This document shows, one piece after another, positions 238 to 53,429 of a DNA stretch of 64,000 nucleotides. The position numbers and the translations under genes were made by a program. Each line of letters starts with the position of its first letter. Positions within the stretch are counted from its first letter, which is position 1. The notes below the pieces were generated by a model. The model made no database searches. It had not been told where the DNA came from and worked only from the letters and a program-made list of their open reading frames with translations. The stretch spans positions 124,001 to 188,000 of IMG/VR virus record IMGVR_UViG_3300035070_002626. One strand, 5' to 3'.

Positions 238-309
238 CCGAATTATGTCTTATGGATGTTACTGAAAGGTATACGATAAATAATATAATAACAATATAGG
301 AGTTTTATT

Positions 310-1280: not shown

Positions 1281-1302
1281 GTTAGTCTCCTTTGATTAAA
1301 TT

Positions 1303-2343: not shown

Positions 2344-2351
2344 GGAACCTC

Positions 2352-6584: not shown

Positions 6585-6603
6585 AATTAAGGTACCTTCC
6601 TAG

Positions 6604-8720: not shown

Positions 8721-8779
8721 TCTCCTATAATAATATTTAGTTTATTAACGTACTAAATACTACCGTAAAGGGGCACACA

Positions 8780-9061: not shown

Positions 9062-9063
9062 TA

Positions 9064-9381: not shown

Positions 9382-9386
9382 TATAC

Positions 9387-9674: not shown

Positions 9675-9680
9675 ACTGTG

Positions 9681-12064: not shown

Positions 12065-12086
12065 TATTGTGACCTAATAGTGTATT

Positions 12087-14395: not shown

Positions 14396-14396
14396 A

Positions 14397-15116: not shown

Positions 15117-15151
15117 GTTCTGTTTGCTCCTAAGGCTTTACGCCTTTATTT

Positions 15152-15967
15152 TTATTTTTTAAATTTCCACATATTGCGCTTCTTACCCTCGAAAACCATT
15201 TCAATCACACCTTGCTCTATTGCTGCTCTTACTGCATAGTTAACTGGCTCATTAACACTATAACCAGTTTCGGCTTCTACAAGTTTTGTTCCTAAGTCGA
15301 AAAACTTAAAAATATCTGCACCCGATCTATAGCTTGCAATAGTCTTCTCAGTTGCTATGCTCATTAATACTTTACCAGTGCTAACGCTAACTAAACGCAT
15401 TACAACAGTTACAGTGTCTACTCTGTATTCTGTTTGCACACCGATACCTAAGTATCTTGCTCCTGCGCCTCCTACTGCTGTGTTGCTGTCATACCCAACA
15501 ATTCCCCCTTCAAGTATAAGCCCTGCAAACAACATTGGCTTCAACGGTGTAGGGCCGTTTGGAAGTTCTTTTTCGTACACTTCCCTCGTACTACGAATAA
15601 GTTGACGTTCTTTAATCAAATTATCCATACCTACACGCTCTACCACTTCAAACCAAACGCCATTACCTACATCTTGGAGTGCTTTAATAACCCATACTTC
15701 TGATCCTTGGGTTACTGCGCTCGACAAGTTGGCGATATTATCCGCCGGCTTACGCTGTCCTGTTGCATCTCTGAAACCGTAAACAGCGATTGTAATCTTT
15801 GGTCCATCTATTGCGGGGACCGCCGCAAGCCTATCTTCAATTGGACTAACTTGTACTATAGGAGATGTTTTACTATCTTCTAGAACTTGAAGGCTTTTGT
15901 TAGTTGCGCAGCCTTGTAATATTAGTACACTAAATCCAATTAGTAAAAACGTTTTTATCAGTTTCAT
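15152..15967 (-). CDS. csgG: Curli secretion channel CsgG
   Basis: Lipobox LQGC; AVYGFRDATGQRKP, SSAVTQG, WFEVVER, LIKERQLIR, EGGIVGYDSN, GARYLGIG, NEPVNYAVRAAIE. Confidence 0.96.
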   Translation of the reverse strand: MKLIKTFLLIGFSVLILQGCATNKSLQVLEDSKTSPIVQVSPIEDRLAAVPAIDGPKITIAVYGFRDATGQRKPADNIANLSSAVTQGSEVWVIKALQDVGNGVWFEVVERVGMDNLIKERQLIRSTREVYEKELPNGPTPLKPMLFAGLILEGGIVGYDSNTAVGGAGARYLGIGVQTEYRVDTVTVVMRLVSVSTGKVLMSIATEKTIASYRSGADIFKFFDLGTKLVEAETGYSVNEPVNYAVRAAIEQGVIEMVFEGKKRNMWKFKK

Positions 15968-16425
15968 TAGAAGTTAAACTCCCCGCCGCCGGGTATGCTA
16001 ATTTCTGTAGTTGTACCATCGTCGTCGACAATTGTTAACGTGATAGTTCCTGTTGTTGCGTCTTTAACCCAGGTTATATTTGCTCCTTCAATATCTGCTG
16101 TGCCTGTATTTGCACATGAGTCTCCGCAATTAGCAAACATAGCGTCTACCATTTGCTTACTTAGGTTAGCGTAGATTCTTGATTCCACGTTTCTAAGAAA
16201 CTTGTTTAGTGTTGTATTTTCAAGCTCGCGCTCTAAACGTGATGCCTCTGCCTCTGCCTTCTTTCGCAAGTCTTCACTGCGATTATGTTGTAACTGTTCT
16301 ACACTTAATACATGCGTAGAATATCCGTTTCCAAAATGAAACGCTGGAGATTTAAACCCCCAAACAAGATCAGCATTTGCTGACCCTGCAATTAACAGTA
16401 ATAAAACAGTGTATAAATTTTTCAT
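15967..16425 (-). CDS. csgF: Curli assembly protein CsgF
   Basis: Signal peptide, DLVWGFKSPAF..GNG N-terminus, C-terminal ITLTIVD..GTTTEISIP; directly upstream of csgG. Confidence 0.88.
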   Translation of the reverse strand: MKNLYTVLLLLIAGSANADLVWGFKSPAFHFGNGYSTHVLSVEQLQHNRSEDLRKKAEAEASRLERELENTTLNKFLRNVESRIYANLSKQMVDAMFANCGDSCANTGTADIEGANITWVKDATTGTITLTIVDDDGTTTEISIPGGGEFNF

Positions 16426-16442
16426 GGTCACCCTCTTATATG

Positions 16443-16450
16443 TATTTATA
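16443..16450 (-). promoter_or_regulatory. T4-type late promoter for the csg operon
   Basis: Exact TATAAATA just upstream of csgF. Confidence 0.6.
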
Positions 16451-16499
16451 GGACCATTTAAAATCTTTAACTGTGTTACTAATTTATTTATTATGCCTA

Positions 16500-16517
16500 G
16501 TGTAAATATTTTTACAC
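16500..16517. promoter_or_regulatory. Palindromic operator between csgF and the Fis-like gene
   Basis: GTGTAAA-TATT-TTTACAC (TGT-N10-ACA). Confidence 0.55.
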
Positions 16518-16541
16518 CTATATAATAAAATAAATATTATT

Positions 16542-16769
16542 ATGACCGAGCAAGACGTATTTTTTAACACATTTGATGAGATGTGGACCGAGAAGGAAAT
16601 ACAACATGTTTATGCAGAAAATCTCAACGAACAGTTGGAAACTCTTGAACTAAATTGTATTGAAACTGCACTGCAAGCACACAACGGTAATCGCACAAAA
16701 GCGGCCCAGTTGTTAAACATAGGCCGCACTTGTCTGCTTGCTAAAATGAAAAAATATAATCTAGTCTAA
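16542..16769 (+). CDS. Fis-family helix-turn-helix protein (stand-alone HTH_8)
   Basis: LETLELNCIETALQAHNGNRTKAAQLLNIGRTCLLAKMKKY. Confidence 0.9.
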   Translation: MTEQDVFFNTFDEMWTEKEIQHVYAENLNEQLETLELNCIETALQAHNGNRTKAAQLLNIGRTCLLAKMKKYNLV

Positions 16770-17288
16770 ATGTTTCATTAATTCGTCAATGTTAACTGGT
16801 GTATAGTCAGTATGTTCTACGCACACACACCTATATGGCCCTTCCGGGCTTGGATTACTATGAATATGCCCGTGTATATTAAGTATAGACTGTTTGCTAA
16901 ATCTACTCTTTTGGGCTATTGTATCAGGATGCTGCGAAGTGTGCGATAGTAACAACTTAGGAAAGTTTACTTCCCACATCATAATATGTTCAAAATACGG
17001 TAAAAGAGTTTTAGGGTTGTCTCGATTGCCAATGACTAGACGTTTCTTTCCAGGTAACTTAGCAAAGTTAGCAGCTAGCCATTCAGACTGATTTTCGCCG
17101 CACACTACATCTCCCAGGTGGTATACAATGTCGTCGACTTTGACAGTATCGGCCCAGTTGTCCAACATTGCTTCGTTCATCTGCTTTACTGAATCAAAAG
17201 ACCTTATCAACGAACCAGAGGCATCAAAAAATCCTAGAAGAGGTTCGTCGTTAAAATGTGTATCACTGATTACCCATGTATCGGACAT
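16761..17288 (-). CDS. Calcineurin-like metallophosphoesterase
   Basis: SDTHF, HLGD, GNRD (canonical GNHD), SH, HGHIH. Confidence 0.88.
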   Translation of the reverse strand: MSDTWVISDTHFNDEPLLGFFDASGSLIRSFDSVKQMNEAMLDNWADTVKVDDIVYHLGDVVCGENQSEWLAANFAKLPGKKRLVIGNRDNPKTLLPYFEHIMMWEVNFPKLLLSHTSQHPDTIAQKSRFSKQSILNIHGHIHSNPSPEGPYRCVCVEHTDYTPVNIDELMKHLD

Positions 17289-17307
17289 ATAGCTTACTTT
17301 TCTAATT

Positions 17308-17391
17308 TGGTACTCGCACCCGGACTCGAACCGGGACGCCCTACGGCCACAGATTTTAAGTCTGTTATGTCTACCATTCCATCATGCGAGC
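17308..17391 (-). tRNA. tRNA-Leu (TAA)
   Basis: GCTCGCA/TGCGAGT acceptor stem, ACAGA-CTTAAAA-TCTGT anticodon arm, long variable arm, GGTTCGAGTCC, encoded CCA. Confidence 0.95.
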
Positions 17392-17393
17392 GT

Positions 17394-17470
17394 TGGTGCT
17401 CCCGGTAGGACTCGAACCTACGACCGACCCGTTATGAGCGGGGCGCTCTAACCAACTGAGCTACAGGAGC
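17394..17470 (-). tRNA. tRNA with CAT anticodon, probably tRNA-Ile2 (lysidine) rather than Met
   Basis: GCTCCTG..TAGCTCAGTTGGTTAGAGC..CCCG-CTCATAA-CGGG..GGTTCGAGTCC..ACCA; lacks the initiator C1:A72 mismatch and GGG:CCC anticodon stem. Confidence 0.9.
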
Positions 17471-17481
17471 GGTAATGTTTT

Positions 17482-17616
17482 TTATCGATAATCTTTGATG
17501 TTGTAGGCGTCTTTATATGCACGATCCATATCTTTGCCTCCATGATTATAACCAACAATATAACCGATAATAACACCGCAGATTGCAATGCACAATGAGA
17601 TCATAATAACTTCCAT
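17482..17616 (-). CDS. Small membrane protein (44 aa)
   Basis: Manual translation MEVIMISLCIAICGVIIGYIVGYNHGG...; GGAGG RBS. Confidence 0.65.
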   Translation of the reverse strand: MEVIMISLCIAICGVIIGYIVGYNHGGKDMDRAYKDAYNIKDYR

Positions 17617-17619
17617 GGC

Positions 17620-17886
17620 TTAAGCCTCCATTCCGTCAAACATTTCGTATTCACGTTCACTTGCTGCTTCTTCGCTGCGTTGAGCAATCATGTTTCCTAC
17701 GATTTCGTCAAACGCTTCGTAAAACAATTCTTCGCTTGCAAAATCGCCACGGCATGCAGTGTACGCATCAGCATCAACAAAGTTCCAATTGATGCTGTAA
17801 TCTTCATTGAGATTTTCGGCACGATCTGCTACAGCTTCGACTACATTACGGAGTGTGATATAATTTTGCATGTTGTACACTTTCAT
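17620..17886 (-). CDS. Acidic hypothetical early protein
   Basis: ORF directly behind a sigma70 promoter. Confidence 0.75.
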   Translation of the reverse strand: MKVYNMQNYITLRNVVEAVADRAENLNEDYSINWNFVDADAYTACRGDFASEELFYEAFDEIVGNMIAQRSEEAASEREYEMFDGMEA

Positions 17887-17905
17887 TGTTGCTTTCTATA
17901 CATAC

Positions 17906-17934
17906 TTTATAGCATATACAAATATAATTGTCAA
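17906..17934 (-). promoter_or_regulatory. Sigma70-type promoter driving the small ORFs and tRNAs
   Basis: TTGACA-N17-TATAAA. Confidence 0.7.
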
Positions 17935-17957
17935 CCGGAATATGTGTTTTATTCAAT

Positions 17958-18089
17958 TTATTTTTTTGTAAGTTCTACAAATCTATCTGCAATTTCACGC
18001 ATTTGTTTTGCATTCAAGTTTGCTGTACCCATCGATTCTACAGTACGAGCAATATCGTGTAATTTAATTGCAATTTCGCTGTCCGTCAT
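17958..18089 (-). CDS. Small hypothetical protein (43 aa)
   Basis: Manual translation MTDSEIAIKLHDIARTVESMG...LTKK; abuts the upstream gene. Confidence 0.6.
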   Translation of the reverse strand: MTDSEIAIKLHDIARTVESMGTANLNAKQMREIADRFVELTKK

Positions 18090-18090
18090 G

Positions 18091-18372
18091 CTACTTTTTC
18101 TTTTCTAATTTTTTAATACGTGTTTCTAGTTCGTCTATCTTTTTAGTTACATGTGGATACTTTTTACGCCATGCATCTTCGGGTTGTTGCAACCAAGTCC
18201 ATCCCCAACGGTGCACCAAATAATTTAATGTACGATTAAACCAACTGTATGCCCATAATCCAAGACGAGTGCCTTGGAAGTATGCTAAAAATGCAGCTCC
18301 AAATAAACTCCCTGCAAGTGCAGTGTAAATCCATAGCCTGTCGCTGGCCATTCTTTCTAACATTTCCCACAT
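18091..18372 (-). CDS. Hypothetical membrane protein
   Basis: TM segment plus C-terminal coiled coil. Confidence 0.7.
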   Translation of the reverse strand: MWEMLERMASDRLWIYTALAGSLFGAAFLAYFQGTRLGLWAYSWFNRTLNYLVHRWGWTWLQQPEDAWRKKYPHVTKKIDELETRIKKLEKKK

Positions 18373-18381
18373 TATAATTTC

Positions 18382-18729
18382 CTACTTGTAAACCACAGGG
18401 TCCCAGTCAGATACATCTGTGTCTTTGTATTTAACAATTCTGTCTAACATTACATCATAAAAACTATCCAACTGTTTGCCCCATTTACCTTTAAGGTGCT
18501 CGAGTGCTTGTTCACAAAAATTAAAGTCAGGCTTTTTGTAATTTTCAACTAGTTTGGTGTGTAAATTTGTCACACGTTCTAATTCTGCAATCTCAGTAAC
18601 CGGAATGTCTTCTATTACGCAATATGCAGTTACAACTGGTGAATCGCCTATTTTCATATCGTCAAGTGGTAAAATTGTATATTTGCTTTTCATATTGGTT
18701 GCAATTTCGTCGCCGAAAATAATGTGCAT
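18382..18729 (-). CDS. Stand-alone homolog of the adenylate cyclase C-terminal region (non-catalytic)
   Basis: AAGGAGA RBS before ATG 18729; aligns by eye with the last ~115 aa of the cyclase at 9681-11720. Confidence 0.7.
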   Translation of the reverse strand: MHIIFGDEIATNMKSKYTILPLDDMKIGDSPVVTAYCVIEDIPVTEIAELERVTNLHTKLVENYKKPDFNFCEQALEHLKGKWGKQLDSFYDVMLDRIVKYKDTDVSDWDPVVYK

Positions 18730-18758
18730 TGGTGTCTCCTTGTGTAAGTAATTATGCA

Positions 18759-19553
18759 ATGAAAATACACTTTGATTTAATTTCTGATCTTCACGTAGAT
18801 ACGTGGGAAGAACCGTTTAGTTGGGAAGGCAAAGCTACTAGCTTGTATGCTGTAGTTGCCGGTGATATTAGTAGAGAGCGCAGTGACATTAGACCTGTGC
18901 TCAAAGAGCTATCATCTCATTATAAACTTGTCATATTCGTCGACGGCAATGATGAACATAGATGGGAGTTAGAAAACCTAGGACAAAGTTACGAATCTCT
19001 ACGCCATGAAGTTGCTGGCATTGGTAATGTTGTTTGGTTGCAAGATAATTCTGTAGTAGTCGATGGTGTTGCATTTGTAGGCGTTAATGGCTGGACAGGT
19101 TTTGATTTTGATTGCGACCTTTCTTATCAAGACAGTAAACGCTGGTTAGAAGAAAGATACGGTGTTAGTATGTATGCTGGGCAACAAATCGAAGCACTAT
19201 CATTAAGTGATGCTGGATTCTTATGCAAAACAGTTAGTAAACTACAGACACACCACGATGTTAGAAAAATAGTATTAATTACACATTATGTACCCAATGT
19301 GCGGTTAATCGAACACGATGTTGAGCTAGAAGGTACTCATGCATTAAACTGCACTGGTAATAGCATGTTATCTCGTTGCCTTGACGAAGACCATGAAAAT
19401 AAAGTTCATACATGGTGTTTTGGACATTATCACAGTGATGTTGATACAACCATTGATAACATAAGATATGTAAATAATTGCAGAGGAAGCAATGGCACCA
19501 ATTGGTGCAAAGCCGTGTACTATCCCAAACGCATCGAAATTGATATCAGTTAG
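18759..19553 (+). CDS. Calcineurin-like metallophosphoesterase
   Basis: SDLH, AGD, GNDE, TH, FGHYH motifs. Confidence 0.88.
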   Translation: MKIHFDLISDLHVDTWEEPFSWEGKATSLYAVVAGDISRERSDIRPVLKELSSHYKLVIFVDGNDEHRWELENLGQSYESLRHEVAGIGNVVWLQDNSVVVDGVAFVGVNGWTGFDFDCDLSYQDSKRWLEERYGVSMYAGQQIEALSLSDAGFLCKTVSKLQTHHDVRKIVLITHYVPNVRLIEHDVELEGTHALNCTGNSMLSRCLDEDHENKVHTWCFGHYHSDVDTTIDNIRYVNNCRGSNGTNWCKAVYYPKRIEIDIS

Positions 19554-42637: not shown

Positions 42638-43180
42638 TTATTTGTTTTTTTCAGCCGCAGCAACTTTTGCTGCCAGTGCCGGATATCTCGGATCGGTTGG
42701 TAGTATTCCACCAATTGCAGGAAGCTTGGATTGCTTGGTTGCTTTGGCTTTTTGTCCCGGTACCGGTGTCGGGGCAACTGGTGTTGACTTTGCAATTCCT
42801 GTAGCAATGCTGCTAGGGCGTTTTTTCTTTTGTCTAGCAATGCTTTTTGCAATAGCAGCTTTTTCAACTTTTTCTTGGCGTGCTTTTTCTAACTTTTCTG
42901 GGTCCATGCCTTGTTTTTTCATTAGCTGCGATTTACGTGCTGCCTGTTCTATTTCTTTTTGGTTAGCATCCCATGTTGCTTGAGGATCAGCTGCTGATTT
43001 CTTTACACTAGGCTTAGATGGATCATAGTCTTGTATTTTTTTGCCAAGATTACTAAGTTTATCTAAACCTGTAGCAACACCAGAAACAGCTTTCCCGGCT
43101 TTTTTAAAAAATTCAATTTCAGATACTTTTTCAAGTTCTGCTAATAGATTTTCTTGTATTAGTTGTGCTTTACTTTTCAT
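42638..43180 (-). CDS. Lys/Ala-rich hypothetical protein, putative internal head protein
   Basis: LIQE/LLAE/VSE sites; low-complexity basic body. Confidence 0.6.
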   Translation of the reverse strand: MKSKAQLIQENLLAELEKVSEIEFFKKAGKAVSGVATGLDKLSNLGKKIQDYDPSKPSVKKSAADPQATWDANQKEIEQAARKSQLMKKQGMDPEKLEKARQEKVEKAAIAKSIARQKKKRPSSIATGIAKSTPVAPTPVPGQKAKATKQSKLPAIGGILPTDPRYPALAAKVAAAEKNK

Positions 43181-43430
43181 TTGTACGCCTTACCGATCTA
43201 GAAAACTTGCCAGGATCTCGTGCTCGGATGGCATTTAACAATTTGCGTTGTAAATTTTCAGCTTGCTCAGCAGTGTATAATTCTTCAATTTGTTCCATCA
43301 GGCGCACTGCGCTAGCAATAACATTACTAGCACGACTCTCGACAACATATTCACGTTCTTCGAGTTGTTTATAACGCTCATTGTAAATGCCATCTAGCTC
43401 TTCAAAGATGCTGCGAGTCTTTTTTTGCAT
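43170..43430 (-). CDS. Hypothetical protein
   Basis: AAGGA RBS, TAAATA upstream; first gene of a late operon. Confidence 0.7.
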   Translation of the reverse strand: MQKKTRSIFEELDGIYNERYKQLEEREYVVESRASNVIASAVRLMEQIEELYTAEQAENLQRKLLNAIRARDPGKFSRSVRRTNEK

Positions 43431-43454
43431 GACTTTGTTTGTCCTTTTTAGTAT

Positions 43455-44045
43455 TTATGTATATTTAAAAAGTTGTTGGTTTTCTGTTTCCCAGACTGCT
43501 TCGCTAAACCTTTTTAGTGTCCACATATTTTTTTCATACAGGTAACTGTTTTTTTCTTTCCAGATTTCCCATTGAGCATTATTTGTATCAAATAATTCGT
43601 GATCGCCTTCGATTAAATCAATTAATTCTATACTTTTGCACCCTGAGCGGGCTTTAATTATTTTTGGTATAGCATATGTTTTTGCTAATTCTCTTATTTT
43701 ATCTATCGATTCTGGTGTAGTATCTTCCGTCCAATTTGGATGTAGAAACTTATAACATCTTAAAAATATTATATACCGACTGTAGATGTTCTCTGTAGTA
43801 ATGATTAATTTTTCGTCAAAAAGATCAAGTGGCACGTCTTCGATGTGTGTATGATACCAAACGCCTGGTTTGGTTGTACGGTAGCCTTCGTGAAAAAGTT
43901 CAATGGTTTTAAGGTCTTGGTGCTCATAACTATCTACACTGCCGTCCAGTCTGGGGTTCCATTTGATTTGCTGATTGTTTAAAATAGTAGTAACAATTCC
44001 GCCGCATGCAAAATCAGTGGCTATTAAAATATTTGGTAATTTCAT
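43455..44045 (-). CDS. Hypothetical protein
   Basis: 196-aa ORF; N-terminal ACGG motif similar to 53500-54162. Confidence 0.65.
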   Translation of the reverse strand: MKLPNILIATDFACGGIVTTILNNQQIKWNPRLDGSVDSYEHQDLKTIELFHEGYRTTKPGVWYHTHIEDVPLDLFDEKLIITTENIYSRYIIFLRCYKFLHPNWTEDTTPESIDKIRELAKTYAIPKIIKARSGCKSIELIDLIEGDHELFDTNNAQWEIWKEKNSYLYEKNMWTLKRFSEAVWETENQQLFKYT

Positions 44046-45090
44046 GGAAGGTTGTATCCCATTGCAGATTTCGCCATTTGTCTAATGTGTTTGCCCAATT
44101 AATTGCTGATTCGTGCTCAGTATACGGATACTGACTTAACATGATGGATATTTCATGCTCACTTCCGTACCTTTCTTTTATCTTTTTTCGCAGTGCAGTT
44201 GGTGTTTTTTCAATTCCTATAGTACCGTGGCACGGGTGTATATTAAAATCACTAGGATCACCAAATCTATTTGTCGGCATTGTATCCCTGTGCCACTCTT
44301 TTATTTTATCATAGTAAAAGACGTTGAAAGGATTTAACGTATGTTCTATGCCAAACATAACATTTCCCGGACATTCCGCTACGGCTTTACTAACCAGCTT
44401 TTCAACTGTTGAAAATTTTGCTGGCCAACGCAAATATTCAAATTGTTTGCCTACTCCGTCGATACTACCAATCCATTTAACTAATTTAAAACGTTGCCAC
44501 TGTGCTAGTGTTTTATCCGAAGGATACAATGTGTAATTGCTGGTATACTGTATTGTGATGTCTTGTGGGTTGTTAACAAGTTCTAGTATTCGTAAATGAG
44601 TATTATTCATTAATGGTTCGCCGCCACCAAACTTGATATACCTAAGGTTTGTAGTATCCAGTGTTTCGAACCAACTTACTAGTTTGTCGTCGGTGTTTGT
44701 GCCTTTTCGATCCAACACTTTAATGTTCTCTACGCCATTTCGAACGTTTTCGTCTTGCCAGAAACTGCTACTATTGCTATCACAACTAGCACAAGCAAGA
44801 TTGCATTGCTTGGTAACTGCGATAGTGAGCATCTGCAACCCATCATTGTCTGTCATTAAATCAAAACCAGCTTGCCTGTAGCTGATTTGTTTTTGTTGTT
44901 CTTGATGTATGCAAAGACTGCAAGTTTTTGTTAAATCACCCGAGTTCCACTTTTCTCTCAACTGAGGCAAGGTTGAAAGATCGTGTACACTCTCATTGTG
45001 CGAGAAATAACAACACGGACTGACAGTAAAATCTCCGCCAAGGTTGTTGATTGCAAGTGCACTGCTCAGATGTCTACAAAATTGGGTCAT
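44014..45090 (-). CDS. Radical SAM protein with an N-terminal SPASM/twitch-like domain
   Basis: CNLACASC, GGEP, SIDG; N-terminal C..PCC..C..C. Confidence 0.9.
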   Translation of the reverse strand: MTQFCRHLSSALAINNLGGDFTVSPCCYFSHNESVHDLSTLPQLREKWNSGDLTKTCSLCIHQEQQKQISYRQAGFDLMTDNDGLQMLTIAVTKQCNLACASCDSNSSSFWQDENVRNGVENIKVLDRKGTNTDDKLVSWFETLDTTNLRYIKFGGGEPLMNNTHLRILELVNNPQDITIQYTSNYTLYPSDKTLAQWQRFKLVKWIGSIDGVGKQFEYLRWPAKFSTVEKLVSKAVAECPGNVMFGIEHTLNPFNVFYYDKIKEWHRDTMPTNRFGDPSDFNIHPCHGTIGIEKTPTALRKKIKERYGSEHEISIMLSQYPYTEHESAINWANTLDKWRNLQWDTTFHEITKYFNSH

Positions 45091-46493
45091 CCGTTTTGTT
45101 TAATTCCTGCCAGCATTTGTTTGAGCTTGCTGCTCTGTACATCGGCTACTACCTTGGGAGCATCCTGCGGCATGCTGTCAGTTACATCTTTTTGTACCAT
45201 TTGACTTTTAGCTTTAATGCCTGCTAATATAGTGCTGCCTTGTGTTCCTGCACCTGATGCTGCTTCATCATCATCCAATCCAGTGATCCTCAGACTTTCC
45301 ATGTCAAACTCCAAGTCAATCTTTTGCCCAACACCACTACTGCTTCTAGTTTTCATTGCTTGTATTTGATAGCGCCCACGTTCTTTCATTGCTCTACTTG
45401 TAAAAATACCAAACACATTGTCTGCTGTGTTAATCTTACTAATACCACCCGAAATATGCGAATGATCAAATTCAATTTCCTCAACAGCACTTCTGTTCAA
45501 CTGACTTGCTGTAACAAATAATATGTTTAATTCACGTGCCAAGTTGCGCAGTTCTTCACTTACATACTTGTCTTTCACAAACAAATCATTTGGACTAACT
45601 TTTGCACTCACTGGCATAAGCAAGTCCAGGTAGTCAACCAACATAAAGTCAATATCTTTGCCTTGTTTAATACTAAGTTCTTTTACAAATGCACGAATAT
45701 CGTTAACAGTGCTTTGTGCTGGCATGTATTTAATCTGCAGATTACCTGCTTTTTTGCCTGCCATCTTGACTTTCATTTCAACAGTGTCAATATCTTTAAA
45801 CAACTGTTTGCTGGGTGTTCCAGTTAACATACTATCAAGTCGCATGGCTGTCAAGCCCTCACTAAGCTCCAATGTAATGTAAGTCCCATTGAGCCCAGCT
45901 TCCATCCAATTAACTGCCAAGTTTTGCATAAACAAACTCTTGCCCGATCCTGATCCGCCTGCAAAAATTTGTAGTTCGCCTCTATTAAAGCCGCCATACA
46001 ACAGCTTGTCCAAGTTTTTCCAGCCTGTGCTGTTCTGTCCATTGTTGTCTTTAAGTGCCGACAGCCTGGCTTTGGGATCTTCAAAGTAATTTGTTCCCAA
46101 GTCTTTTGTTAAACTTATCTGCACAGCATCTTTGATTAGTTTTTCAACAGGCGAGTACTCGCCTTTTTCCAACAAGTCTGCACTTTGTAAAATTGCACGT
46201 TCAAGTTCTTGCCTGCGAGTAAAGCTTTCAAACTCGCCTAAAAACCAATCAGTGTGCCCACTGTTGAGATCGGGTATCTCCTGTAAATCAACACCGGTAA
46301 CTGCCTTTACTTGCATACGGTCCGGAAGTGTTTTGTGCTCATTTGCATGGTCATAGATAAACTCAGCAGCTTCACGCAGATCTTTATCAAAATTTTCTTT
46401 GTTGAAAATGTTTTGTACACGCAAGTAACTTTGTGCATCTTGCATTGCCATTTCTAAGAATAATTTTTGTACTTCATATGTATATTCAGTCAT
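45087..46493 (-). CDS. Replicative DNA helicase (T4 gp41/DnaB-like)
   Basis: GGSGSGKS, TLELSE, VDYLDL, TASQLNR, KTRSS. Confidence 0.93.
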   Translation of the reverse strand: MTEYTYEVQKLFLEMAMQDAQSYLRVQNIFNKENFDKDLREAAEFIYDHANEHKTLPDRMQVKAVTGVDLQEIPDLNSGHTDWFLGEFESFTRRQELERAILQSADLLEKGEYSPVEKLIKDAVQISLTKDLGTNYFEDPKARLSALKDNNGQNSTGWKNLDKLLYGGFNRGELQIFAGGSGSGKSLFMQNLAVNWMEAGLNGTYITLELSEGLTAMRLDSMLTGTPSKQLFKDIDTVEMKVKMAGKKAGNLQIKYMPAQSTVNDIRAFVKELSIKQGKDIDFMLVDYLDLLMPVSAKVSPNDLFVKDKYVSEELRNLARELNILFVTASQLNRSAVEEIEFDHSHISGGISKINTADNVFGIFTSRAMKERGRYQIQAMKTRSSSGVGQKIDLEFDMESLRITGLDDDEAASGAGTQGSTILAGIKAKSQMVQKDVTDSMPQDAPKVVADVQSSKLKQMLAGIKQNG

Positions 46494-47155
46494 ACTTTTA
46501 ATTTATTCCTTATTTGGTCAGCTACGTGTTTATGTGTTAGCGGCCCTGGATGTGATCCGTCCTCGGCTACGTCAAGTTTGTTTTTGTACATGCTATCCCA
46601 AGGATCGATCCACAAATCCCAATCTACCAATTCCATGTTGTTTTGCATTTGTTCAACAAATCTATCATGGTCACTGCTAGCATCCTGCACTAGTTTATTC
46701 ATCCAGTCTATGCTGTCGCTCCAGCTAATCAATCCGTTAACAAACAACAGTTTTACATTGTGACTGCTTGCTTGATCTTGTAATATACGGCAAAAGTCTA
46801 TTAGTTGCATTATATTACCATAATCGTGATTGAGCAACTGATATTGGACAATAAACTTGTCATTAGTTGATATTGCATCTTGAGTCGATCCAAAATAGAT
46901 ACCTCGGTCTGGTGCTGGGTAAACCCAATGCCGATGGACAGAACTCCATTGTACAATATATATATCAGCTAAGTTGTCAACAATTGCTTTGCTTGTGTGT
47001 AAAAATATTTTCAAGTTACTTGCGCCACCGCTAGCATCATTGATATGATCAGTTGCAATCAAGTTAGGATATATTCTAGCATCGGCTTTTTCGTTTGTAA
47101 AGCCAGCACCTTGGGTGATACTACATCCATTAAAATAGAACTTCATACTAGCCAT
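46490..47155 (-). CDS. SGNH/GDSL-like hydrolase
   Basis: FNGCSIT, GASN, VQWS..R, DGSHPG. Confidence 0.7.
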   Translation of the reverse strand: MASMKFYFNGCSITQGAGFTNEKADARIYPNLIATDHINDASGGASNLKIFLHTSKAIVDNLADIYIVQWSSVHRHWVYPAPDRGIYFGSTQDAISTNDKFIVQYQLLNHDYGNIMQLIDFCRILQDQASSHNVKLLFVNGLISWSDSIDWMNKLVQDASSDHDRFVEQMQNNMELVDWDLWIDPWDSMYKNKLDVAEDGSHPGPLTHKHVADQIRNKLKV

Positions 47156-47838
47156 CCTAGTTTTTGCATTGTAGGTTTTGCTGTAATATTAAAATAATGC
47201 TTGTTGCCAGCAGCACCATGATGCCCAAACCAGCCATATGTATCATAATCTACTGGTTCATTTATATGTAAGTTTACACTGTAGTATGTGTTTTTGCAAG
47301 TCTGAAATTGCGGTTTTTTTGTCTTTTTGATCAGAGTTTTTATTGTAGGCCAACTTGACTTTTCCATAAAAGGAGTAGACATAACACAAAACATAACTTT
47401 ATCTAATAGAACATCCAATAACAATAATTCTTTTAACGCAGTAGCTTCGGCCCAACTATTGTCCCATCTGTCGATATTTTCTTTTTCAGTTTGGTGCGTT
47501 GGTATTTGCAACAAGCCTGTGTGACACAACTCGGGCTGTGTGTACTGTTGTTGCATAGCATGATTGTAAACTGTATAATGCTGCATCTTACCGGCTTCTC
47601 CTGCAAAGTGTGTAATTCGTCCCATTGGTGGCACTGCAACAATAATAAAATCATCACGGCTGATATCAGTATGTAGAATTGTATGAGAAATACTTTCAAT
47701 GTTATTTCCGGGCCAACTATGGTTGTGTATTTCATCAACTGGCAACAACCCTGCGCAAAGAGCCCACCAACTATCTTGTGGATCAACACAAAAGTTGGGT
47801 GTAGTGTAGCTGTCACCAAACACATAAAGCTTACTCAT
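47143..47838 (-). CDS. SGNH/GDSL-like hydrolase
   Basis: VFGDSYT, PGNN, C-terminal GHHG. Confidence 0.65.
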   Translation of the reverse strand: MSKLYVFGDSYTTPNFCVDPQDSWWALCAGLLPVDEIHNHSWPGNNIESISHTILHTDISRDDFIIVAVPPMGRITHFAGEAGKMQHYTVYNHAMQQQYTQPELCHTGLLQIPTHQTEKENIDRWDNSWAEATALKELLLLDVLLDKVMFCVMSTPFMEKSSWPTIKTLIKKTKKPQFQTCKNTYYSVNLHINEPVDYDTYGWFGHHGAAGNKHYFNITAKPTMQKLGWLV

Positions 47839-48808
47839 TTAGTTTCCTTTGCAGTCTTTTCTTAAACATTTCAATTTTAATCTTGCTCGATTCGGCATGT
47901 TTGTGTATTTGTAGTAGTGTATTTACTACTCCATATTTCACAACTGCATCATTTACGTCTTTAACATCATCTGGCCATTCGGGTATGCTTACTTCAAACT
48001 TGTATTCAACTGCTGCGTCTATAATACTTAATCCTGCTTTGTCTTGGTCAGGAACAACAATGATCCTACGCTTCAGCTGTTTTAGTAATTGTGCTTGCTG
48101 TGGGCTAATAGTATCATGCATGACTGCCAAGCCACTAATGCTTAATGCATCAAAAATCCCTTCAGTGACAATTGCACTAGTCCAGTCTGCTTTTTGCAAG
48201 TCATACCCAAACACATACCCGGGTTGCTGGCTGTTAATAAACTTAGGTGTACGATTGTCCAAGTACCTCGAAGTATGTCCAACGATTCTATTTTTGTATG
48301 TGTATGGAACCACTATCCTATCTCGTATTCCACGTTTCTTGTCAACTAAAAACGGGTATTCTAACACTATTCTCCGACTTGCTAGATAGTCTGAATATCG
48401 TTGATGATCTGCATTGCCGGGATCAATTACTTCAACACCGTCCGGTACTTCAGTTTCATTGAACGCCACGTCTACATGGCGTATTTGATTGCGCTCTGCT
48501 GTTAAGTCTAGCAGACTCTTGCGTTTAAGACTTTCTAAATTAAGACGTTCAACATCAACACTGTCCACACCAAGCCATTCTAGAAAGCGTCTAGCTTTAT
48601 AACTCACCGGCCTACCTGGAGTAAAGCTAGCAGTAAATCCGCAATTAAAGCAATGATAACTCCATTCATCGTCCTGTTGCCGTAGCCCGCCACGACTTCG
48701 TCGATCCGTTGATTCACCGTTGTGAATGCAACACGGAGCATTAAAACTAATCCATCCAGAACTAGTTACTTTATGCTTTGTAGGCAGATAGCTGAGTATG
48801 TCTAACAT
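47831..48808 (-). CDS. DNA primase (T4 gp61-like, zinc finger plus TOPRIM)
   Basis: PCC...YHCFNCG, RIVVP, TEGIFDAL, PDQD, KDVND. Confidence 0.9.
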   Translation of the reverse strand: MLDILSYLPTKHKVTSSGWISFNAPCCIHNGESTDRRSRGGLRQQDDEWSYHCFNCGFTASFTPGRPVSYKARRFLEWLGVDSVDVERLNLESLKRKSLLDLTAERNQIRHVDVAFNETEVPDGVEVIDPGNADHQRYSDYLASRRIVLEYPFLVDKKRGIRDRIVVPYTYKNRIVGHTSRYLDNRTPKFINSQQPGYVFGYDLQKADWTSAIVTEGIFDALSISGLAVMHDTISPQQAQLLKQLKRRIIVVPDQDKAGLSIIDAAVEYKFEVSIPEWPDDVKDVNDAVVKYGVVNTLLQIHKHAESSKIKIEMFKKRLQRKLNE

Positions 48809-49551
48809 TATGCTATTATATTAGCATACTTTATGTGTTCGATCAAGTGTTTTGATATAATTTCATGCCCTTTTTCATTCGGGTGCCCTTTTGCAGCAAA
48901 AAGTCCAACTGATAATTCTTTCTGTTTAGATTGAAGGATCCCCCGCCAATTCATTCCAGGATAAAGTAACGTAGATGATTGTGTTTTCCAATTATTTTCC
49001 AGCACACTAAACTGTAATAATTTTGCACCAGATTTGTTAGCAAAATGATCAAACAAATTAATTGTTTGACGAAAATTGTATTCGCTCCAGCTTCGATGAT
49101 AGCTCATTCCTAGCCATAATTTTTGTAGCTTAAACCAGTTATCATCAATATCAGGATTGGGTTGTGTTAACCAAGTTCCGTGCATGTGACGATTCCATGG
49201 AGGATCTTTACTGCTCACTTCGTGCAACGGATTAAACCAACTTTGTCTGCTACTATCAGTTAATCCTACTAGCCACAACGAATCCTGTAGATCTTGGTTG
49301 TTATTATTTAACAACCAATCCACTGTCCAACGCATGCTTTCGAGGCTGCTACCAGGAAATGCTAGGTTTTCTAATTTAACACCGTAATGATTAGCAACAA
49401 GCCCGGCGTAACAATGATCTAACCGATATTTTGTATTTTCAGTATAATGATCAAGTATTCCTTTATCTGGATGTGCACTGAATTGCGGATCCAATAGTTC
49501 GTCACCATAAGTCCAGCTATCGCCAAATGCTATAATTCGTTTAATAGCCAT
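48808..49551 (-). CDS. SGNH/GDSL-like hydrolase
   Basis: AFGDSWTYG, PGSS, GHPNEKGH. Confidence 0.75.
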   Translation of the reverse strand: MAIKRIIAFGDSWTYGDELLDPQFSAHPDKGILDHYTENTKYRLDHCYAGLVANHYGVKLENLAFPGSSLESMRWTVDWLLNNNNQDLQDSLWLVGLTDSSRQSWFNPLHEVSSKDPPWNRHMHGTWLTQPNPDIDDNWFKLQKLWLGMSYHRSWSEYNFRQTINLFDHFANKSGAKLLQFSVLENNWKTQSSTLLYPGMNWRGILQSKQKELSVGLFAAKGHPNEKGHEIISKHLIEHIKYANIIA

Positions 49552-50584: not shown

Positions 50585-50962
50585 ATGGGCGTAGAACTCT
50601 TCCAAAAGATCGCTGAGCGATATCCATTTATTACGTTTTGTACATATGCAAAGAACGAATATGTCGGCGTGGTTCAAAATCGAGATGATCAAGTTACAAC
50701 TATATACGATTTTGGTAGCATAGTAAACGATCAACAAAAACGAGATTTTATCGAACTAGCATCGCAGTGGTGGTGGGAAAGTAATCGCAGTATACCTATC
50801 AACATTTTTCTCAAAAATGATTGGGATCAATTTAGGCCTTATCTCAGAACATTTATCAACAAGGACTTGGATATATTGCTTGGGCCTGCAACAAGTTTAG
50901 CAGAACTGTCACGTAAGAAAATTAAACGCCGTAGTATTACTCTTGTTCGCAGAGTAGATTAA
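50585..50962 (+). CDS. Hypothetical protein
   Basis: 125-aa ORF, WWWESNRSIPINIFL. Confidence 0.75.
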   Translation: MGVELFQKIAERYPFITFCTYAKNEYVGVVQNRDDQVTTIYDFGSIVNDQQKRDFIELASQWWWESNRSIPINIFLKNDWDQFRPYLRTFINKDLDILLGPATSLAELSRKKIKRRSITLVRRVD

Positions 50963-51500
50963 GATGCAATGCTACTAGTGTTGCATAGCTAACAGCATGT
51001 GATTTCTTAAACACAAACCCATCACTACTATCACCATCCCACACACTAGCAAACACTTCATCCCATGGCTTGTTTTTCAGGTGTGCTTTACCGGGTCGAA
51101 TAATAGATATAAATGCAGCCATACGCTGTATGTTGTCTGGGCGCATTTCATTGAGTAGTTGTGTATAGTTACCTACATGCACTAGCTTTTGTGCAAGCTC
51201 GTTGTTAGTCCACATCAAGTCCCATTGGGGTTCTTTTGCTAACAATTCGTCATAGTGCTGCTGATCTCGTATTGATGTGTACACACTCATGTTAAGAAAG
51301 TCTAGTTTAAAGTATCCACGACTTTCAGCTTCGTCGTATGTTATACTAGCACAATTGTTTTTTGCATCATACGGAACAGGCGTAACATATACACCGGAGT
51401 TATGACGTCGACCTTGTTCGTTTTGCCTAGCAGAAGTACATTGAATTAAATCAATGATTGCTTGCCTGTCAGCAAAGTCAATGTCGACGTCTGCACTCAT
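50937..51500 (-). CDS. Minimal DNA polymerase III alpha (DnaE)-like catalytic core, 187 aa
   Basis: DVDIDF, HNSGVYV, GYFKLDFL, SIIRPG, FKKSHAVSYA in DnaE order; ATGA coupling at 51497-51500. Confidence 0.85.
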   Translation of the reverse strand: MSADVDIDFADRQAIIDLIQCTSARQNEQGRRHNSGVYVTPVPYDAKNNCASITYDEAESRGYFKLDFLNMSVYTSIRDQQHYDELLAKEPQWDLMWTNNELAQKLVHVGNYTQLLNEMRPDNIQRMAAFISIIRPGKAHLKNKPWDEVFASVWDGDSSDGFVFKKSHAVSYATLVALHLNLLCEQE

Positions 51501-51751
51501 ACTAAGTCGCGAATAAACGAAGTAATATTTGCCACCAAAAACAACCCTGCTGCATATGTAAACCATTGCCCAAGATTAACTGCTGGCAGCTCTGCAACAT
51601 AAATTGCTTCGCCGAGCACAACACCGCCGTTGTACAGTGCATAACATGCACCTAGATATGCAGCTACTTTTATTACACTAAGATAAAACTTTTTGTCTTT
51701 ATGCTTAGGTTTTACTTGAACTTGTGAAATCTTTGGTCGAGTTAGTCCCAT
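51497..51751 (-). CDS. Small two-TM membrane protein
   Basis: AAGGAGA RBS, promoter upstream. Confidence 0.7.
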   Translation of the reverse strand: MGLTRPKISQVQVKPKHKDKKFYLSVIKVAAYLGACYALYNGGVVLGEAIYVAELPAVNLGQWFTYAAGLFLVANITSFIRDLV

Positions 51752-51806: not shown

Positions 51807-52508
51807 TTACCAGCCTGCTTTTTTAAGTATTTCTTCTGCATACGCTTTGTCATCTGGATAATCTTTAAACTTTTTCTGCCAGAAGTCTGGATCAATCCAA
51901 GGCCACACTATCTTAATCTGATCACCGTTCATGTTTTCAAGATAGTCTTGCCCAGACTTGCTGTTAAACAATAACCACGGACTAATGCGCCCAGTTGATA
52001 TTGCAAATGCTACAGTGTTTTCGTTTCCATATCGTAAAAAGTCGTGTGCTGGATTGCCAGTTTTGTCACTCCATTTCATGCTGTACTTGATACCACGCTC
52101 AAGTGCATCTTGAAGTGCTTCACGTTTTATATATTGTTGCAAGTATTCATCATACAATGCTTCTTTACACCAGTGATCTATCTTTTTATTATTTGAAAGC
52201 AACCAGTTTAAAAACTTGGGCACATTTATAGCATTAATGGCTTGGCAATATCTTCCCCATGTTACAAACGCTTTGTAGTACGGACTTTTAGCAAAATCTG
52301 CAAATGTTTTTATTTTAGCACTGCCTTGTGTTGTTTCATAGAAACGCAAATAGGCTTGTAAACCTATTTGTACACCTACTTCTTTTTCTTCTTGAAATCT
52401 CTTTTTTGGTTCACACAGATGAACAGACAAACTGTTTTCACGTTTGAACTCACGCTTGCAATATTTGCAAACATAGACTTCACTTTTTGTCTGCGGTGCC
52501 GCTGTCAC
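51807..52508 (-). CDS. Hypothetical protein with an N-terminal C2H2/C2HC zinc finger
   Basis: YVCKYCKREFKRENSLSVHLC. Confidence 0.75.
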   Translation of the reverse strand: MTAAPQTKSEVYVCKYCKREFKRENSLSVHLCEPKKRFQEEKEVGVQIGLQAYLRFYETTQGSAKIKTFADFAKSPYYKAFVTWGRYCQAINAINVPKFLNWLLSNNKKIDHWCKEALYDEYLQQYIKREALQDALERGIKYSMKWSDKTGNPAHDFLRYGNENTVAFAISTGRISPWLLFNSKSGQDYLENMNGDQIKIVWPWIDPDFWQKKFKDYPDDKAYAEEILKKAGW

Positions 52509-52929
52509 GCATGAATTCCTTTAGCTCTTTGTTGGTTATTAACTTACTTAGTAAGTCAATTTCATCTGCTTTCATTGCTGGATACAACTCCATCAGCGTT
52601 TTCTTTGCTATGTTGTTGCCTTTGTCTTTTTTCTTAGGTGCAATCCACTGATGCCTGTGATTTCCCATACCCGGACTAACACTTGTTGCACACAACCATT
52701 GTAGTTTTGGATGCTTGTTGATATCAAAGAAATGCTTGTTAAAACGCTCGTTGCAGGATATCAAATAATATTCTTGTAGTTCGCTGCTTCCTTGCACACT
52801 GCTTCCCCAGCGTATCATAAGATAGTTTGAAAACTTTTTACGCTCTTCGTCAGTGAGACTGTCATAAAAGTCTCGATCTTTACTATCAAAGCAACGCATT
52901 TCGTTTGCTATGTTAAGCTTGTCACTCAT
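52480..52929 (-). CDS. Putative clamp-loader small subunit (gp62-like)
   Basis: KFSNYLMIRW.S, N, HPKLQW, W..PKKK pattern; replication context. Confidence 0.5.
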   Translation of the reverse strand: MSDKLNIANEMRCFDSKDRDFYDSLTDEERKKFSNYLMIRWGSSVQGSSELQEYYLISCNERFNKHFFDINKHPKLQWLCATSVSPGMGNHRHQWIAPKKKDKGNNIAKKTLMELYPAMKADEIDLLSKLITNKELKEFMRDSGTADKK

Positions 52930-53429
52930 TAAAATGCCTGCGTGATGTCAACAATTTCACAGTTCCTAGAGATATCTTTAACAAAGTATACACAACGGGG
53001 ATTAGGGCTGTCGTCAATTGGCACTGCCAACATCTGTCCGTTCTTCAACTTTGGCACATACCAAGTTACATCTTGATACACATCAACAATCTCAATGTTT
53101 AGGTAAGTAGGAGCAAAACTAGTCAACGGATTAAATTCAAAGACCTTGAATCCCCTGTCGTTGATACTAGTAAGTGCTAACATTTCTAAGTCGCCCACAT
53201 CTGGCTCTCCAATCAACACTTGCCAGTCAATGGGCATTTTCATAGTAGTGTTACCAATTTTAAGCACTAGTGCTGGACTATTAAACGTTTCTAGGAAAAT
53301 CAACGGAATGTAAAAATGATCTGCGTTTGCTGGATCGCTGTTATCAAAGATTGCAAAACGCATATCGTCGATTTCTTCTGGCAATGCATCCAACTCGAAT
53401 ACAGTATTATCTAGTGTTAATATTTTCAT
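52929..53429 (-). CDS. Hypothetical beta-rich protein
   Basis: 166-aa ORF, TAATG-coupled to the next gene. Confidence 0.7.
   Translation of the reverse strand: MKILTLDNTVFELDALPEEIDDMRFAIFDNSDPANADHFYIPLIFLETFNSPALVLKIGNTTMKMPIDWQVLIGEPDVGDLEMLALTSINDRGFKVFEFNPLTSFAPTYLNIEIVDVYQDVTWYVPKLKNGQMLAVPIDDSPNPRCVYFVKDISRNCEIVDITQAF

What the first reader, a model, noticed from the sequence alone, without database searches (positions are those of the whole stretch)
50937..51500. A 187-aa minimal DnaE retaining all three catalytic aspartates
Seen: five DnaE motifs in order - DVDIDF (E. coli PDFDVDF, D401/D403), HNSGVYV (HAGGVVI), GYFKLDFL (GLVKFDFL, D555), SIIRPG (ALFRPG), FKKSHAVSYA (FNKSHSAAYA). 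The intervening thumb and finger segments are deleted, and PHP, HhH, OB and clamp-binding regions are absent. The ORF is intact and translationally coupled, so it looks streamlined rather than decayed. Inference: a miniature C-family polymerase/nucleotidyltransferase, or the catalytic subunit of a split enzyme whose other parts may be the neighbouring zinc-finger (51807-52508) or 50585-50962 proteins.
Basis: partly seen in the sequence, partly recalled or inferred. Interest (0 to 1): 0.8.

Follow-up and report, generated by a model that had tools for sequence, protein, structure and literature searches.

The report
Half of a split mini-DnaE polymerase
This 187-residue jumbo-phage protein is the metal-binding half of a tiny two-piece relative of the bacterial replicative polymerase DnaE; the family was described by computation in 2021 but has not, as far as I could find, been tested at the bench.

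Summary
Window 50940-51500 (-) encodes a 187-aa protein with the DnaE motifs in order. It has the D-x-D-x-D strand (E. coli D401/D403), the third catalytic Asp (D555), and the RPG and KKSH finger motifs. It lacks the PHP, thumb, distal-finger, clamp-binding and OB regions. Sequence profiles and an AlphaFold model (pLDDT 95) match only Pol III alpha structures. The Asp triad is kept in at least 99 of 101 diverse homologues, lengths are 179-219 aa, and dN/dS is 0.05-0.14, so the gene is not decayed.

It is the C-terminal (Mg2+/template-binding) unit of the split minimal Pol III alpha that Iyer et al. (2021, PMC7824862) described in group 2.2 jumbo phages. This is PHROG 11778, already labelled "DNA polymerase" in RefSeq.

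The missing N-terminal unit is 160 aa, hits Pfam PF07733 and carries an invariant GVGRGSS motif. It lies on the same 299,910-bp contig, on the same strand, 86 kb away and outside the window, next to the clamp loader. The break falls in the loop equivalent to E. coli residues 394-400.

Verdict: a real, intact gene and a new member of a known, biochemically untested family. Interest is moderate to low.

The parts
50940..51500 (-). CDS of the C-terminal (Mg2+/template-binding) unit of the split minimal Pol III alpha, 187 aa; stop codon at 50937-50939
   Evidence: PHROG 11778 'DNA polymerase', E=6.9e-56, full length. Profile against the PDB hits only Pol III alpha. AF2 plus Foldseek. 5541 homologues in metagenomes.
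51474..51491 (-). DVDIDF: strand with the first two catalytic Asp (D4 and D6, equivalent to E. coli D401 and D403) plus D8
   Evidence: BLASTP. D4 and D6 are kept in 100/101 sequences and D8 in 99/101.
51384..51404 (-). HNSGVYV, equivalent to E. coli HAGGVVI (512-518); palm strand that follows the deleted thumb
   Evidence: H33 and G36 are kept in 99/101 sequences.
51294..51317 (-). GYFKLDFL: third catalytic Asp (D67, equivalent to E. coli D555)
   Evidence: D67 is invariant in 101/101 sequences.
51090..51107 (-). SIIRPG finger motif (E. coli ALFRPG, 636-641)
   Evidence: R135 and P136 are invariant.
50982..51011 (-). FKKSHAVSYA finger motif (E. coli FNKSHSAAYA, about 756-765)
   Evidence: K165 is kept in 95/101 and H168 in 99/101 sequences.
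51497..51751 (-). Upstream 84-aa ORF that looks hydrophobic by eye (not tested); its TGA overlaps the ATG of the C-unit (ATGA)
   Evidence: Weakly conserved in relatives (41% identity in L056).
51807..52508 (-). Conserved neighbour: phage-specific protein with an N-terminal C2H2-like zinc finger (PHROG 11058); no DnaE similarity
   Evidence: Syntenic in phage Paride (34% identity).
52480..52929 (-). Conserved neighbour, 149 aa, PHROG 11758, function unknown
52929..53429 (-). Conserved neighbour, 166 aa, PHROG 11279, function unknown
50585..50962 (+). Convergent 125-aa ORF (PHROG 11637) that overlaps the 3' end of the C-unit gene by 26 bp; the arrangement is conserved in Paride and L056
54169..55632 (-). 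UvsW-type helicase that opens the conserved replication block
47831..48808 (-). DnaG-like (Toprim) primase downstream of the C-unit
45087..46493 (-). DnaB-like replicative helicase

Best explanation
The ORF is the C-terminal unit of a two-polypeptide, PHP-less, thumb-less minimal version of DNA polymerase III alpha. This enzyme is typical of 'group 2.2' (RaK2/121Q/GAP32/PA5oct-like) jumbo phages.

Shown:
- This unit carries the strand with D4/D6 (equivalent to E. coli D401/D403), the strand with D67 (equivalent to D555), and a shortened finger module (RPG, KKSH).
- A separate 160-aa N-terminal unit (Pfam PF07733, invariant GVGRGSS) corresponds to E. coli residues about 321-393.
- That unit is encoded 86 kb downstream on the same strand of the same 299,910-bp phage contig, just upstream of the clamp-loader gene.
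- The break maps to the loop equivalent to E. coli 394-400.

Inferred:
- The two proteins associate non-covalently to rebuild one Pol-beta-like nucleotidyltransferase active site. The N-unit would hold the triphosphate of the incoming dNTP. The C-unit would bind the two Mg2+ ions and contact the template and nascent base pair.
- With no thumb, clamp-binding, OB or proofreading parts of its own, the enzyme is probably a distributive, auxiliary DNA polymerase. It may do gap filling, primer extension or repair beside the phage's main replicase, and any extra contacts would come from other replisome proteins.
For: - Family identity: PHROG 11778, E=6.9e-56. About 40% identity to 'DNA polymerase / DnaE-like Pol III alpha' ORFs in 97 jumbo-phage records.
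- DnaE homology. AF2 model pLDDT 95, with the top 12 PDB fold hits all Pol III alpha.
- Active-site conservation and purifying selection.
- N-unit family: PF07733 proteins of 160-185 aa with invariant GVGRGSS. hhalign to E. coli 321-393 gives probability 94.8%. The top 15 fold hits are all DnaE-type.
- Same genome: the N-unit is on Ga0374950_000001 at 88,449-88,928 and the C-unit at 174,940-175,500, both on the minus strand. A related 316-kb contig has the same arrangement, 91 kb apart.
- Co-occurrence in isolates: the C-unit is in 97 records and the N-unit in 92, with the same host genera, 31-44 kb apart.
- One natural N-C fusion, P0220 (375 aa), has a DnaE-like linker.
- Published description of exactly this split enzyme: PMC7824862.
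Against: - No biochemical data were found in the held literature; searches returned only the 2021 computational paper.
- Physical association of the two units was not modelled. The tool folds single chains, and MAFFT could not build a usable block alignment for the fused protein.
- The fusion protein is a singleton on one 2.4-kb metagenome contig.
- Loss of the thumb and most of the fingers leaves templated synthesis unproven.
- The presence of a family B polymerase in this genome was not checked.
Confidence: 0.8

Rival explanations
1. The 187-aa protein is a stand-alone miniature polymerase or nucleotidyltransferase that needs no other DnaE-derived part.
For: All three catalytic Asp and two finger motifs lie in one polypeptide. 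tblastn found the C-unit in 97 phage records and the N-unit in 92, so a few genomes might carry only the C-unit.
Against: The protein begins at the D-x-D strand and lacks the helix and G-S motif half of the Pol-beta fold. The N-unit supplies that half, with invariant GVGRGSS. Both units are present in this genome and in relatives. A natural fusion exists in the expected N-to-C order. The 97 versus 92 gap may reflect search sensitivity or partial records.
Confidence: 0.06
2. The missing parts of the enzyme are supplied by neighbouring gene products: the zinc-finger protein 51807-52508, ORF 50585-50962, and the 166-aa and 149-aa proteins.
For: The block of 166-aa, 149-aa, 233-aa zinc-finger, C-unit and convergent 125-aa genes keeps its order from this aquatic phage to Pseudomonas phage Paride, at 34-46% identity. 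The C-unit is translationally coupled to the ORF upstream.
Against: None of these proteins matches DnaE, PF07733 or the N-unit profile. hmmsearch found nothing and hhalign gave at most 3% probability. Atlas searches give only phage families of unknown function. A bona fide missing half exists elsewhere in the genome. These proteins could still be accessory factors; that was not tested.
Confidence: 0.05
3. The two-piece enzyme is not a templated DNA polymerase. It could instead be a template-independent nucleotidyltransferase, for example one that adds tails or makes a nucleotide signal, built on the DnaE palm.
For: The thumb, most of the fingers, and the clamp-binding and OB regions are absent. 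Pol-beta-fold enzymes include many non-templated transferases (general knowledge).
Against: The retained finger motifs (RPG, KKSH) are the ones conserved with replicative DnaE. Both genes sit in replication modules: UvsW, primase and DnaB for the C-unit, and the clamp loader for the N-unit.
Confidence: 0.08
4. The ORF is a decaying remnant of a full-length dnaE.
For: The protein is far shorter than DnaE, and the Pfam finger domain scores only below threshold (12.7 versus 22 bits).
Against: There are 5541 homologues. The 101 aligned full-length homologues span 179-219 aa and keep the catalytic Asp in at least 99 of 101 sequences. dN/dS is 0.05-0.14. The predicted fold is very confident.
Confidence: 0.01

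Closest known systems
Split minimal DNA polymerase III alpha of group 2.2 jumbo phages (Iyer, Anantharaman, Krishnan, Burroughs & Aravind 2021, Viruses 13:63); C-terminal unit = PHROG 11778, e.g. Paride_0017 and the matching ORFs of PA5oct, RaK2, 121Q, GAP32 and CBB
   Same: Same length class, motifs and full-length profile match. Same gene neighbourhood (UvsW, three small ORFs, C-unit, convergent ORF, primase, DnaB). A separate N-terminal unit lies far away on the same strand, next to the clamp loader.
   Different: Only about 40% identical to the isolate proteins. The host phage is an uncultivated aquatic jumbo phage (299.9-kb contig). The two units are 86 kb apart rather than 31-44 kb, because an accessory-gene island is inserted between them.
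Bacterial DnaE (Pol III alpha; PDB 2HNH, 2HPI, 5FKV, 7PU7)
   Same: Pol-beta-like palm strands with the D401/D403/D555 equivalents. Finger motifs RPG and KSH. Only these structures are hit by the profile and fold searches.
   Different: No PHP domain, no thumb, about 100 finger residues deleted, and nothing beyond about residue 775 (no clamp-binding, HhH, OB or tau-binding regions). The N-terminal palm half is a separate polypeptide.
566-aa contiguous PHP-less DnaE-like protein in related contigs (e.g. L056:15349-17049, minus strand)
   Same: DnaE palm plus fingers without PHP. Encoded 5-7 kb from the C-unit gene in relatives of this phage.
   Different: A single polypeptide that passes the Pfam thresholds (PF07733 E=3e-41, PF17657 E=1e-16), retains sequence in the thumb position and has a C-terminal extension. 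It lies on the opposite strand and is absent from the window.

Membership tests
Split minimal Pol III alpha, C-terminal unit (PHROG 11778; Iyer et al. 2021) | Full-length match to the family profile, length about 180-220 aa | tested here: met
   E=6.9e-56, residues 24-208 of the 209-aa ORF against profile positions 6-194 of 197. The 101 aligned full-length homologues span 179-219 aa.
Split minimal Pol III alpha, C-terminal unit (PHROG 11778; Iyer et al. 2021) | Mg2+-binding acidic triad equivalent to E. coli D401, D403 and D555 | tested here: met
   D4, D6 and D67 align with E. coli D401, D403 and D555. They are kept in 100, 100 and 101 of 101 homologues.
Split minimal Pol III alpha, C-terminal unit (PHROG 11778; Iyer et al. 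2021) | Template-binding finger remnant (RPG and K-S-H motifs) | tested here: met
Split minimal Pol III alpha, C-terminal unit (PHROG 11778; Iyer et al. 2021) | Separate N-terminal NTP-binding unit encoded by a distant gene in the same genome | tested here: met
   A 160-aa PF07733 protein lies at 88,449-88,928 of the same 299,910-bp contig, 86 kb from the C-unit. It is not in the window.
Split minimal Pol III alpha, C-terminal unit (PHROG 11778; Iyer et al. 2021) | Group 2.2-type jumbo phage background (UvsW, DnaB, DnaG-like primase, clamp loader) | tested here: met
   Window 55.6-19.5 kb is collinear with Paride 11.8-44.2 kb.
Split minimal Pol III alpha, C-terminal unit (PHROG 11778; Iyer et al. 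2021) | Accompanying family B DNA polymerase in the genome | not tested
   The ten large window ORFs scanned gave no DNA-polymerase family, and the stretches walked carry no polymerase Pfam other than PF07733. The window was not scanned exhaustively and the rest of the contig was not read.
Split minimal Pol III alpha, C-terminal unit (PHROG 11778; Iyer et al. 2021) | Physical association of the two units and polymerase activity | not testable with these tools
   No multimer prediction is available and no biochemical data were found in the literature.
Bacterial C-family replicative polymerase alpha subunit (DnaE/PolC) | Complete Pol-beta-like palm, including the G-S nucleotide-binding motif, in one polypeptide | tested here: not met
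   The ORF starts at the D-x-D strand. The GVGRGSS motif is in a different protein.
Bacterial C-family replicative polymerase alpha subunit (DnaE/PolC) | N-terminal PHP domain | tested here: not met
   No Pfam PHP hit was found, and the protein begins at the equivalent of E. coli residue 398.
Bacterial C-family replicative polymerase alpha subunit (DnaE/PolC) | Thumb domain between the D-x-D strand and the second palm segment | tested here: not met
   24 residues separate D8 and H33, against 106 in E. coli between 405 and 512.
Bacterial C-family replicative polymerase alpha subunit (DnaE/PolC) | Clamp-binding, HhH, OB and tau-binding C-terminal regions | tested here: not met
   The protein ends about 14 residues after the motif that aligns to E. 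coli about 756-765.
Pfam PF17657 DNA_pol3_finger | Score above the curated gathering threshold | tested here: not met
   12.7 bits against a cut-off of 22; only profile positions 53-82 of 166 matched.

The most novel reading that the evidence does not exclude
The pair of N-unit and C-unit (347 aa in total) is a genuine template-directed DNA polymerase, the smallest C-family polymerase core known. In this reading it works as part of a multi-subunit assembly, in which thumb-like and clamp-tethering functions are supplied in trans by the conserved, unexplained neighbours. Those are the 166-aa, 149-aa and zinc-finger proteins beside the C-unit, and the two small ORFs between the N-unit and the clamp loader.
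Probability: 0.1. Interest if true: 0.7.

Novelty: new member of a known kind. Interest (0 to 1): 0.35.

Why it matters
If the reconstituted pair is active, it would define the minimal catalytic core of C-family polymerases. It would also be a natural example of an active site assembled from two polypeptides encoded tens of kilobases apart. It bears on how the bacterial replicase evolved: Iyer et al. suggest it models the ancestral enzyme. It also raises the question of why jumbo phages, which carry a family B polymerase in this group according to Iyer et al. (not checked here), keep a second polymerase. As a discovery it is not new, because the family is published and annotated.
- the location of both halves in an uncultivated aquatic jumbo phage;
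- the exact break point relative to E. coli DnaE;
- evidence of strong purifying selection;
- a single natural fused form;
- a contiguous 566-aa relative in sister phages.

Tried and rejected
1. Looked for the N-terminal unit inside the window. A regex for G-R-G-S, tblastn with the N half of P0220, two N-unit HMMs and hhalign against all 117 ORFs of at least 90 aa (maximum probability 3%) found nothing.
2. Expected the N-unit 31-44 kb downstream, as in the isolates. Synteny with Paride breaks at window position 19.5 kb, and the N-unit lies beyond an inserted accessory island.
3. Scanned IMG/VR with an N-unit alignment. The neighbours of N-units in those loci have no homologues in the window.
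4. Tried to model the natural fusion P0220 with a block alignment of N-units and C-units. MAFFT stacked one group on the wrong half in three attempts, so the last structure job went to the N-unit alone.
5. phmmer of the single sequence against the PDB found nothing; the family profile was needed.
6. megablast of 4 kb around the gene against isolate phages found no match.
7. Atlas searches of three neighbours gave only phage families of unknown function or scores in the chance range.
8. Considered whether the 566-aa DnaE-like gene in relatives is a recent mobile insertion. Its 92.7% identity between L056 and L019 is similar to that of the UvsW and DnaB genes (about 91%), so the data give no sign of this.

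Full report
**What is there**

The finding lies on the minus strand. The mechanical ORF is 50937-51566 (209 aa from the first ATG). Close homologues are 184-192 aa and begin MSAD.../MPDIDIDF, so the real start is the ATG at 51500, giving 187 aa. That ATG overlaps the TGA of an upstream 84-aa ORF as ATGA.

| Motif | Residues | Window coordinates |
|---|---|---|
| DVDIDF | 4-9 | 51474-51491 |
| HNSGVYV | 33-39 | 51384-51404 |
| GYFKLDFL | 62-69 | 51294-51317 |
| SIIRPG | 132-137 | 51090-51107 |
| FKKSHAVSYA | 164-173 | 50982-51011 |

**Is it really DnaE-like?**

- Pairwise BLASTP against E. coli DnaE (fetched as L002) aligns the motifs collinearly. D4/D6/D8 match 401/403/405, H33 onward matches 512 onward, D67 matches D555, RPG matches 639-641, and KKSH matches about 757-760. 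The best segment has E=3e-5.
- The identification of D401, D403 and D555 as the catalytic carboxylates of E. coli Pol III alpha comes from established literature, not from a test here.
- A profile of 101 diverse family members (A1) hits nine PDB sequences at E up to 1. All are Pol III alpha or DnaE chains, and the best E is 1e-5. hhalign places residues 53-138 on E. coli 541-642.
- AlphaFold2 with this alignment gives pLDDT 95.0 and pTM 0.87. In Foldseek against the PDB, the top 12 hits are all Pol III alpha (Thermus aquaticus, M. tuberculosis, E. coli), with probability 0.91-1.00 and TM-score 0.39-0.58 normalised to the query. The next hit has E>1.
- Relative to E. coli, about 80 residues (the thumb) are missing between D8 and H33. 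About 100 finger residues are missing between RPG and KSH. Nothing beyond about residue 775 is present. No PHP domain is found.

**Intact, not decayed**

- The 90%-clustered protein collection holds 5541 homologues at E up to 0.001. The 50%-clustered library holds 338 representatives.
- In A1, lengths are 179-219 aa. D4 and D6 are kept in 100/101 sequences, D8 in 99/101, D67, R135 and P136 in 101/101, and H168 in 99/101.
- Nei-Gojobori dN/dS against nine close relatives from IMG/VR is 0.05-0.14.

**What it is**

- PHROGs places the protein in phrog_11778, 'DNA polymerase' (E=6.9e-56, full length).
- tblastn finds about 40%-identical ORFs in 97 isolate records. All listed are jumbo phages of the RaK2/121Q/GAP32/CBB/PA5oct/Phosso type. 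Annotations range from 'hypothetical' to 'DNA polymerase' and 'DnaE-like DNA polymerase III alpha'.
- Iyer et al. 2021 (PMC7824862) describe this in 'group 2.2' jumbo phages. [quoted passage not shown] They report it alongside a family B polymerase.
- The window ORF is the C-terminal unit of that enzyme. Further literature searches returned no other paper on it and no biochemistry.

**Finding the other half**

- The representative search turned up one 375-aa protein, P0220, whose residues 190-374 match the C-unit. Its N half contains ...GVGRGSSSAS...IDP..., followed by a short linker and DFDID. That is a contiguous mini-DnaE.
- Using that N half as a query gave stand-alone proteins of mostly 160-185 aa, nearly all with Pfam PF07733. 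In the alignments, G-V-G-R-G-S-S is invariant or nearly so.
- Among isolates the N-unit is found in 92 records from the same host genera as the C-unit. It lies 31-44 kb from the C-unit in the records I compared, on the same strand in those where both rows give a strand.
- P0220 itself is a singleton on one 2.4-kb contig, so I treat the fusion as supporting evidence only.

**Where the N-unit is in this genome**

- None of the 64 kb of the window encodes an N-unit.
- The window is positions 124,001-188,000 of JGI scaffold 3300035070 Ga0374950_000001, which is IMGVR_UViG_3300035070_002626, 299,910 bp.
- Window 55.6-19.5 kb is collinear with Paride 11.8-44.2 kb: UvsW, four conserved small genes around the C-unit, primase, DnaB, ribonucleotide reductase, Hsp20 and ClpS. 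Collinearity then stops.
- Walking outwards by exact-protein look-ups crossed an accessory-gene island. It reached a 160-aa PF07733 gene followed by two small ORFs and the clamp loader, the same local order as in Paride.
- A direct scan confirmed that this gene is 100% identical on the same contig at 88,449-88,928, minus strand. The C-unit is at 174,940-175,500, also minus strand, so the two are 86.0 kb apart.
- A related 316-kb contig has the two units about 91 kb apart on one strand.
- hhalign maps N-unit residues 88-160 to E. coli 321-393 (probability 94.8%). Its AF2 model (pLDDT 85.7) gives DnaE-type polymerases as the top 15 fold hits, although the E-values are weak (0.07-1.6).
- The N-unit ends at ...EFLR (E. 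coli ERFLN, 389-393). The C-unit begins three residues before D4 (E. coli D401). The break is therefore in the loop 394-400, inside the Pol-beta-like fold.

**How it most likely works**

Shown:
- The C-unit has the metal-binding triad and finger remnants.
- The N-unit has the G-S nucleotide-binding motif and the preceding helices.
- Both units are conserved, co-occur in the same genomes, and sit in replication gene clusters.

Inferred:
- The two proteins associate to rebuild one active site and catalyse Mg2+-dependent nucleotidyl transfer.
- The absence of thumb, clamp-binding, OB and PHP regions suggests a distributive, auxiliary polymerase for gap filling, primer extension or repair, as Iyer et al. 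also suggest.
- Templated synthesis itself is unproven.

The zinc-finger protein (51807-52508), the 149-aa and 166-aa proteins and the convergent 125-aa ORF keep their order and 34-46% identity between this phage and Paride. None shows any DnaE, PF07733 or N-unit similarity. They are not the missing DnaE parts. An accessory role remains open.

**Verdict**

This is a real, intact, strongly constrained gene, correctly recognised as DnaE-derived. It is half of a published split enzyme rather than a self-sufficient 187-aa polymerase. It is a new member of a known, computationally described and experimentally untested family.

Noticed in passing
L056:15349-17049 (-); also L019:17132-18823 (-) and at least 10 further full-length copies, plus partial copies at contig ends, in other C-unit loci: Relatives of this phage (C-unit 71-81% identical to the window's) carry a contiguous 566-aa PHP-less DnaE-like gene (PF07733 E=3e-41, PF17657 E=1e-16). 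It lies on the opposite strand, 5-7 kb from the C-unit, and is 84-100% conserved between contigs. These phages therefore have both a split and an unsplit mini-DnaE. The window has no trace of it: between the radical-SAM gene and 43173-43454 it has a 196-aa ORF instead.
   Followed up: partly
L004:1066-2193 (protein P0220): A single natural fusion of the N-unit and C-unit (375 aa) with a linker similar to that of E. coli DnaE. It is a singleton cluster on one 2.4-kb metagenome contig, so a rare true fusion cannot be told apart from a lost stop codon or an assembly artefact.
   Followed up: partly
window 1-19500 and about 35 kb beyond the window start (L167, L170, L171, L172): An accessory island interrupts the synteny with PA5oct-like phages. 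It carries a curlin-repeat protein (12087-13268), a CHASE2-guanylate cyclase (9681-11720), UDP-glucose dehydrogenase (5352-6584) and UvdE (1303-2343). Further out it carries SHMT, SufE, a TctA transporter, Fe-SOD, ferredoxin and a 1497-aa lipase-domain protein (precomputed Pfam hits).
   Followed up: no
window 48808-49551, 47143-47838, 46490-47155 (all -): Three ORFs of 221-247 aa flank the primase. The first two begin with GDS-type motifs (FGDSWTYG, FGDSYTTP), and the third begins FNGCSITQG at the same position. By eye they look like GDSL/SGNH-type hydrolase paralogues. They have no counterpart in Paride or L056 at these positions. No family search was run on them.
   Followed up: no
window 50940-51500 compared with its neighbours: Between the window and L056, the C-unit is among the least conserved genes of the replication block: 70.8% identity against 83-89% for UvsW, the 166-aa and 149-aa ORFs, the convergent ORF and DnaB.
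   Followed up: no
window 50937-50962: The 3' end of the C-unit gene overlaps the 3' end of the convergent ORF 50585-50962 by 26 bp. The convergent overlap is also present in Paride (17 bp) and L056.
   Followed up: no
window 44014-45090 (-): A radical-SAM protein gene sits directly downstream of dnaB. It is also present in L056 but not in L019 or Paride at this position.
   Followed up: no
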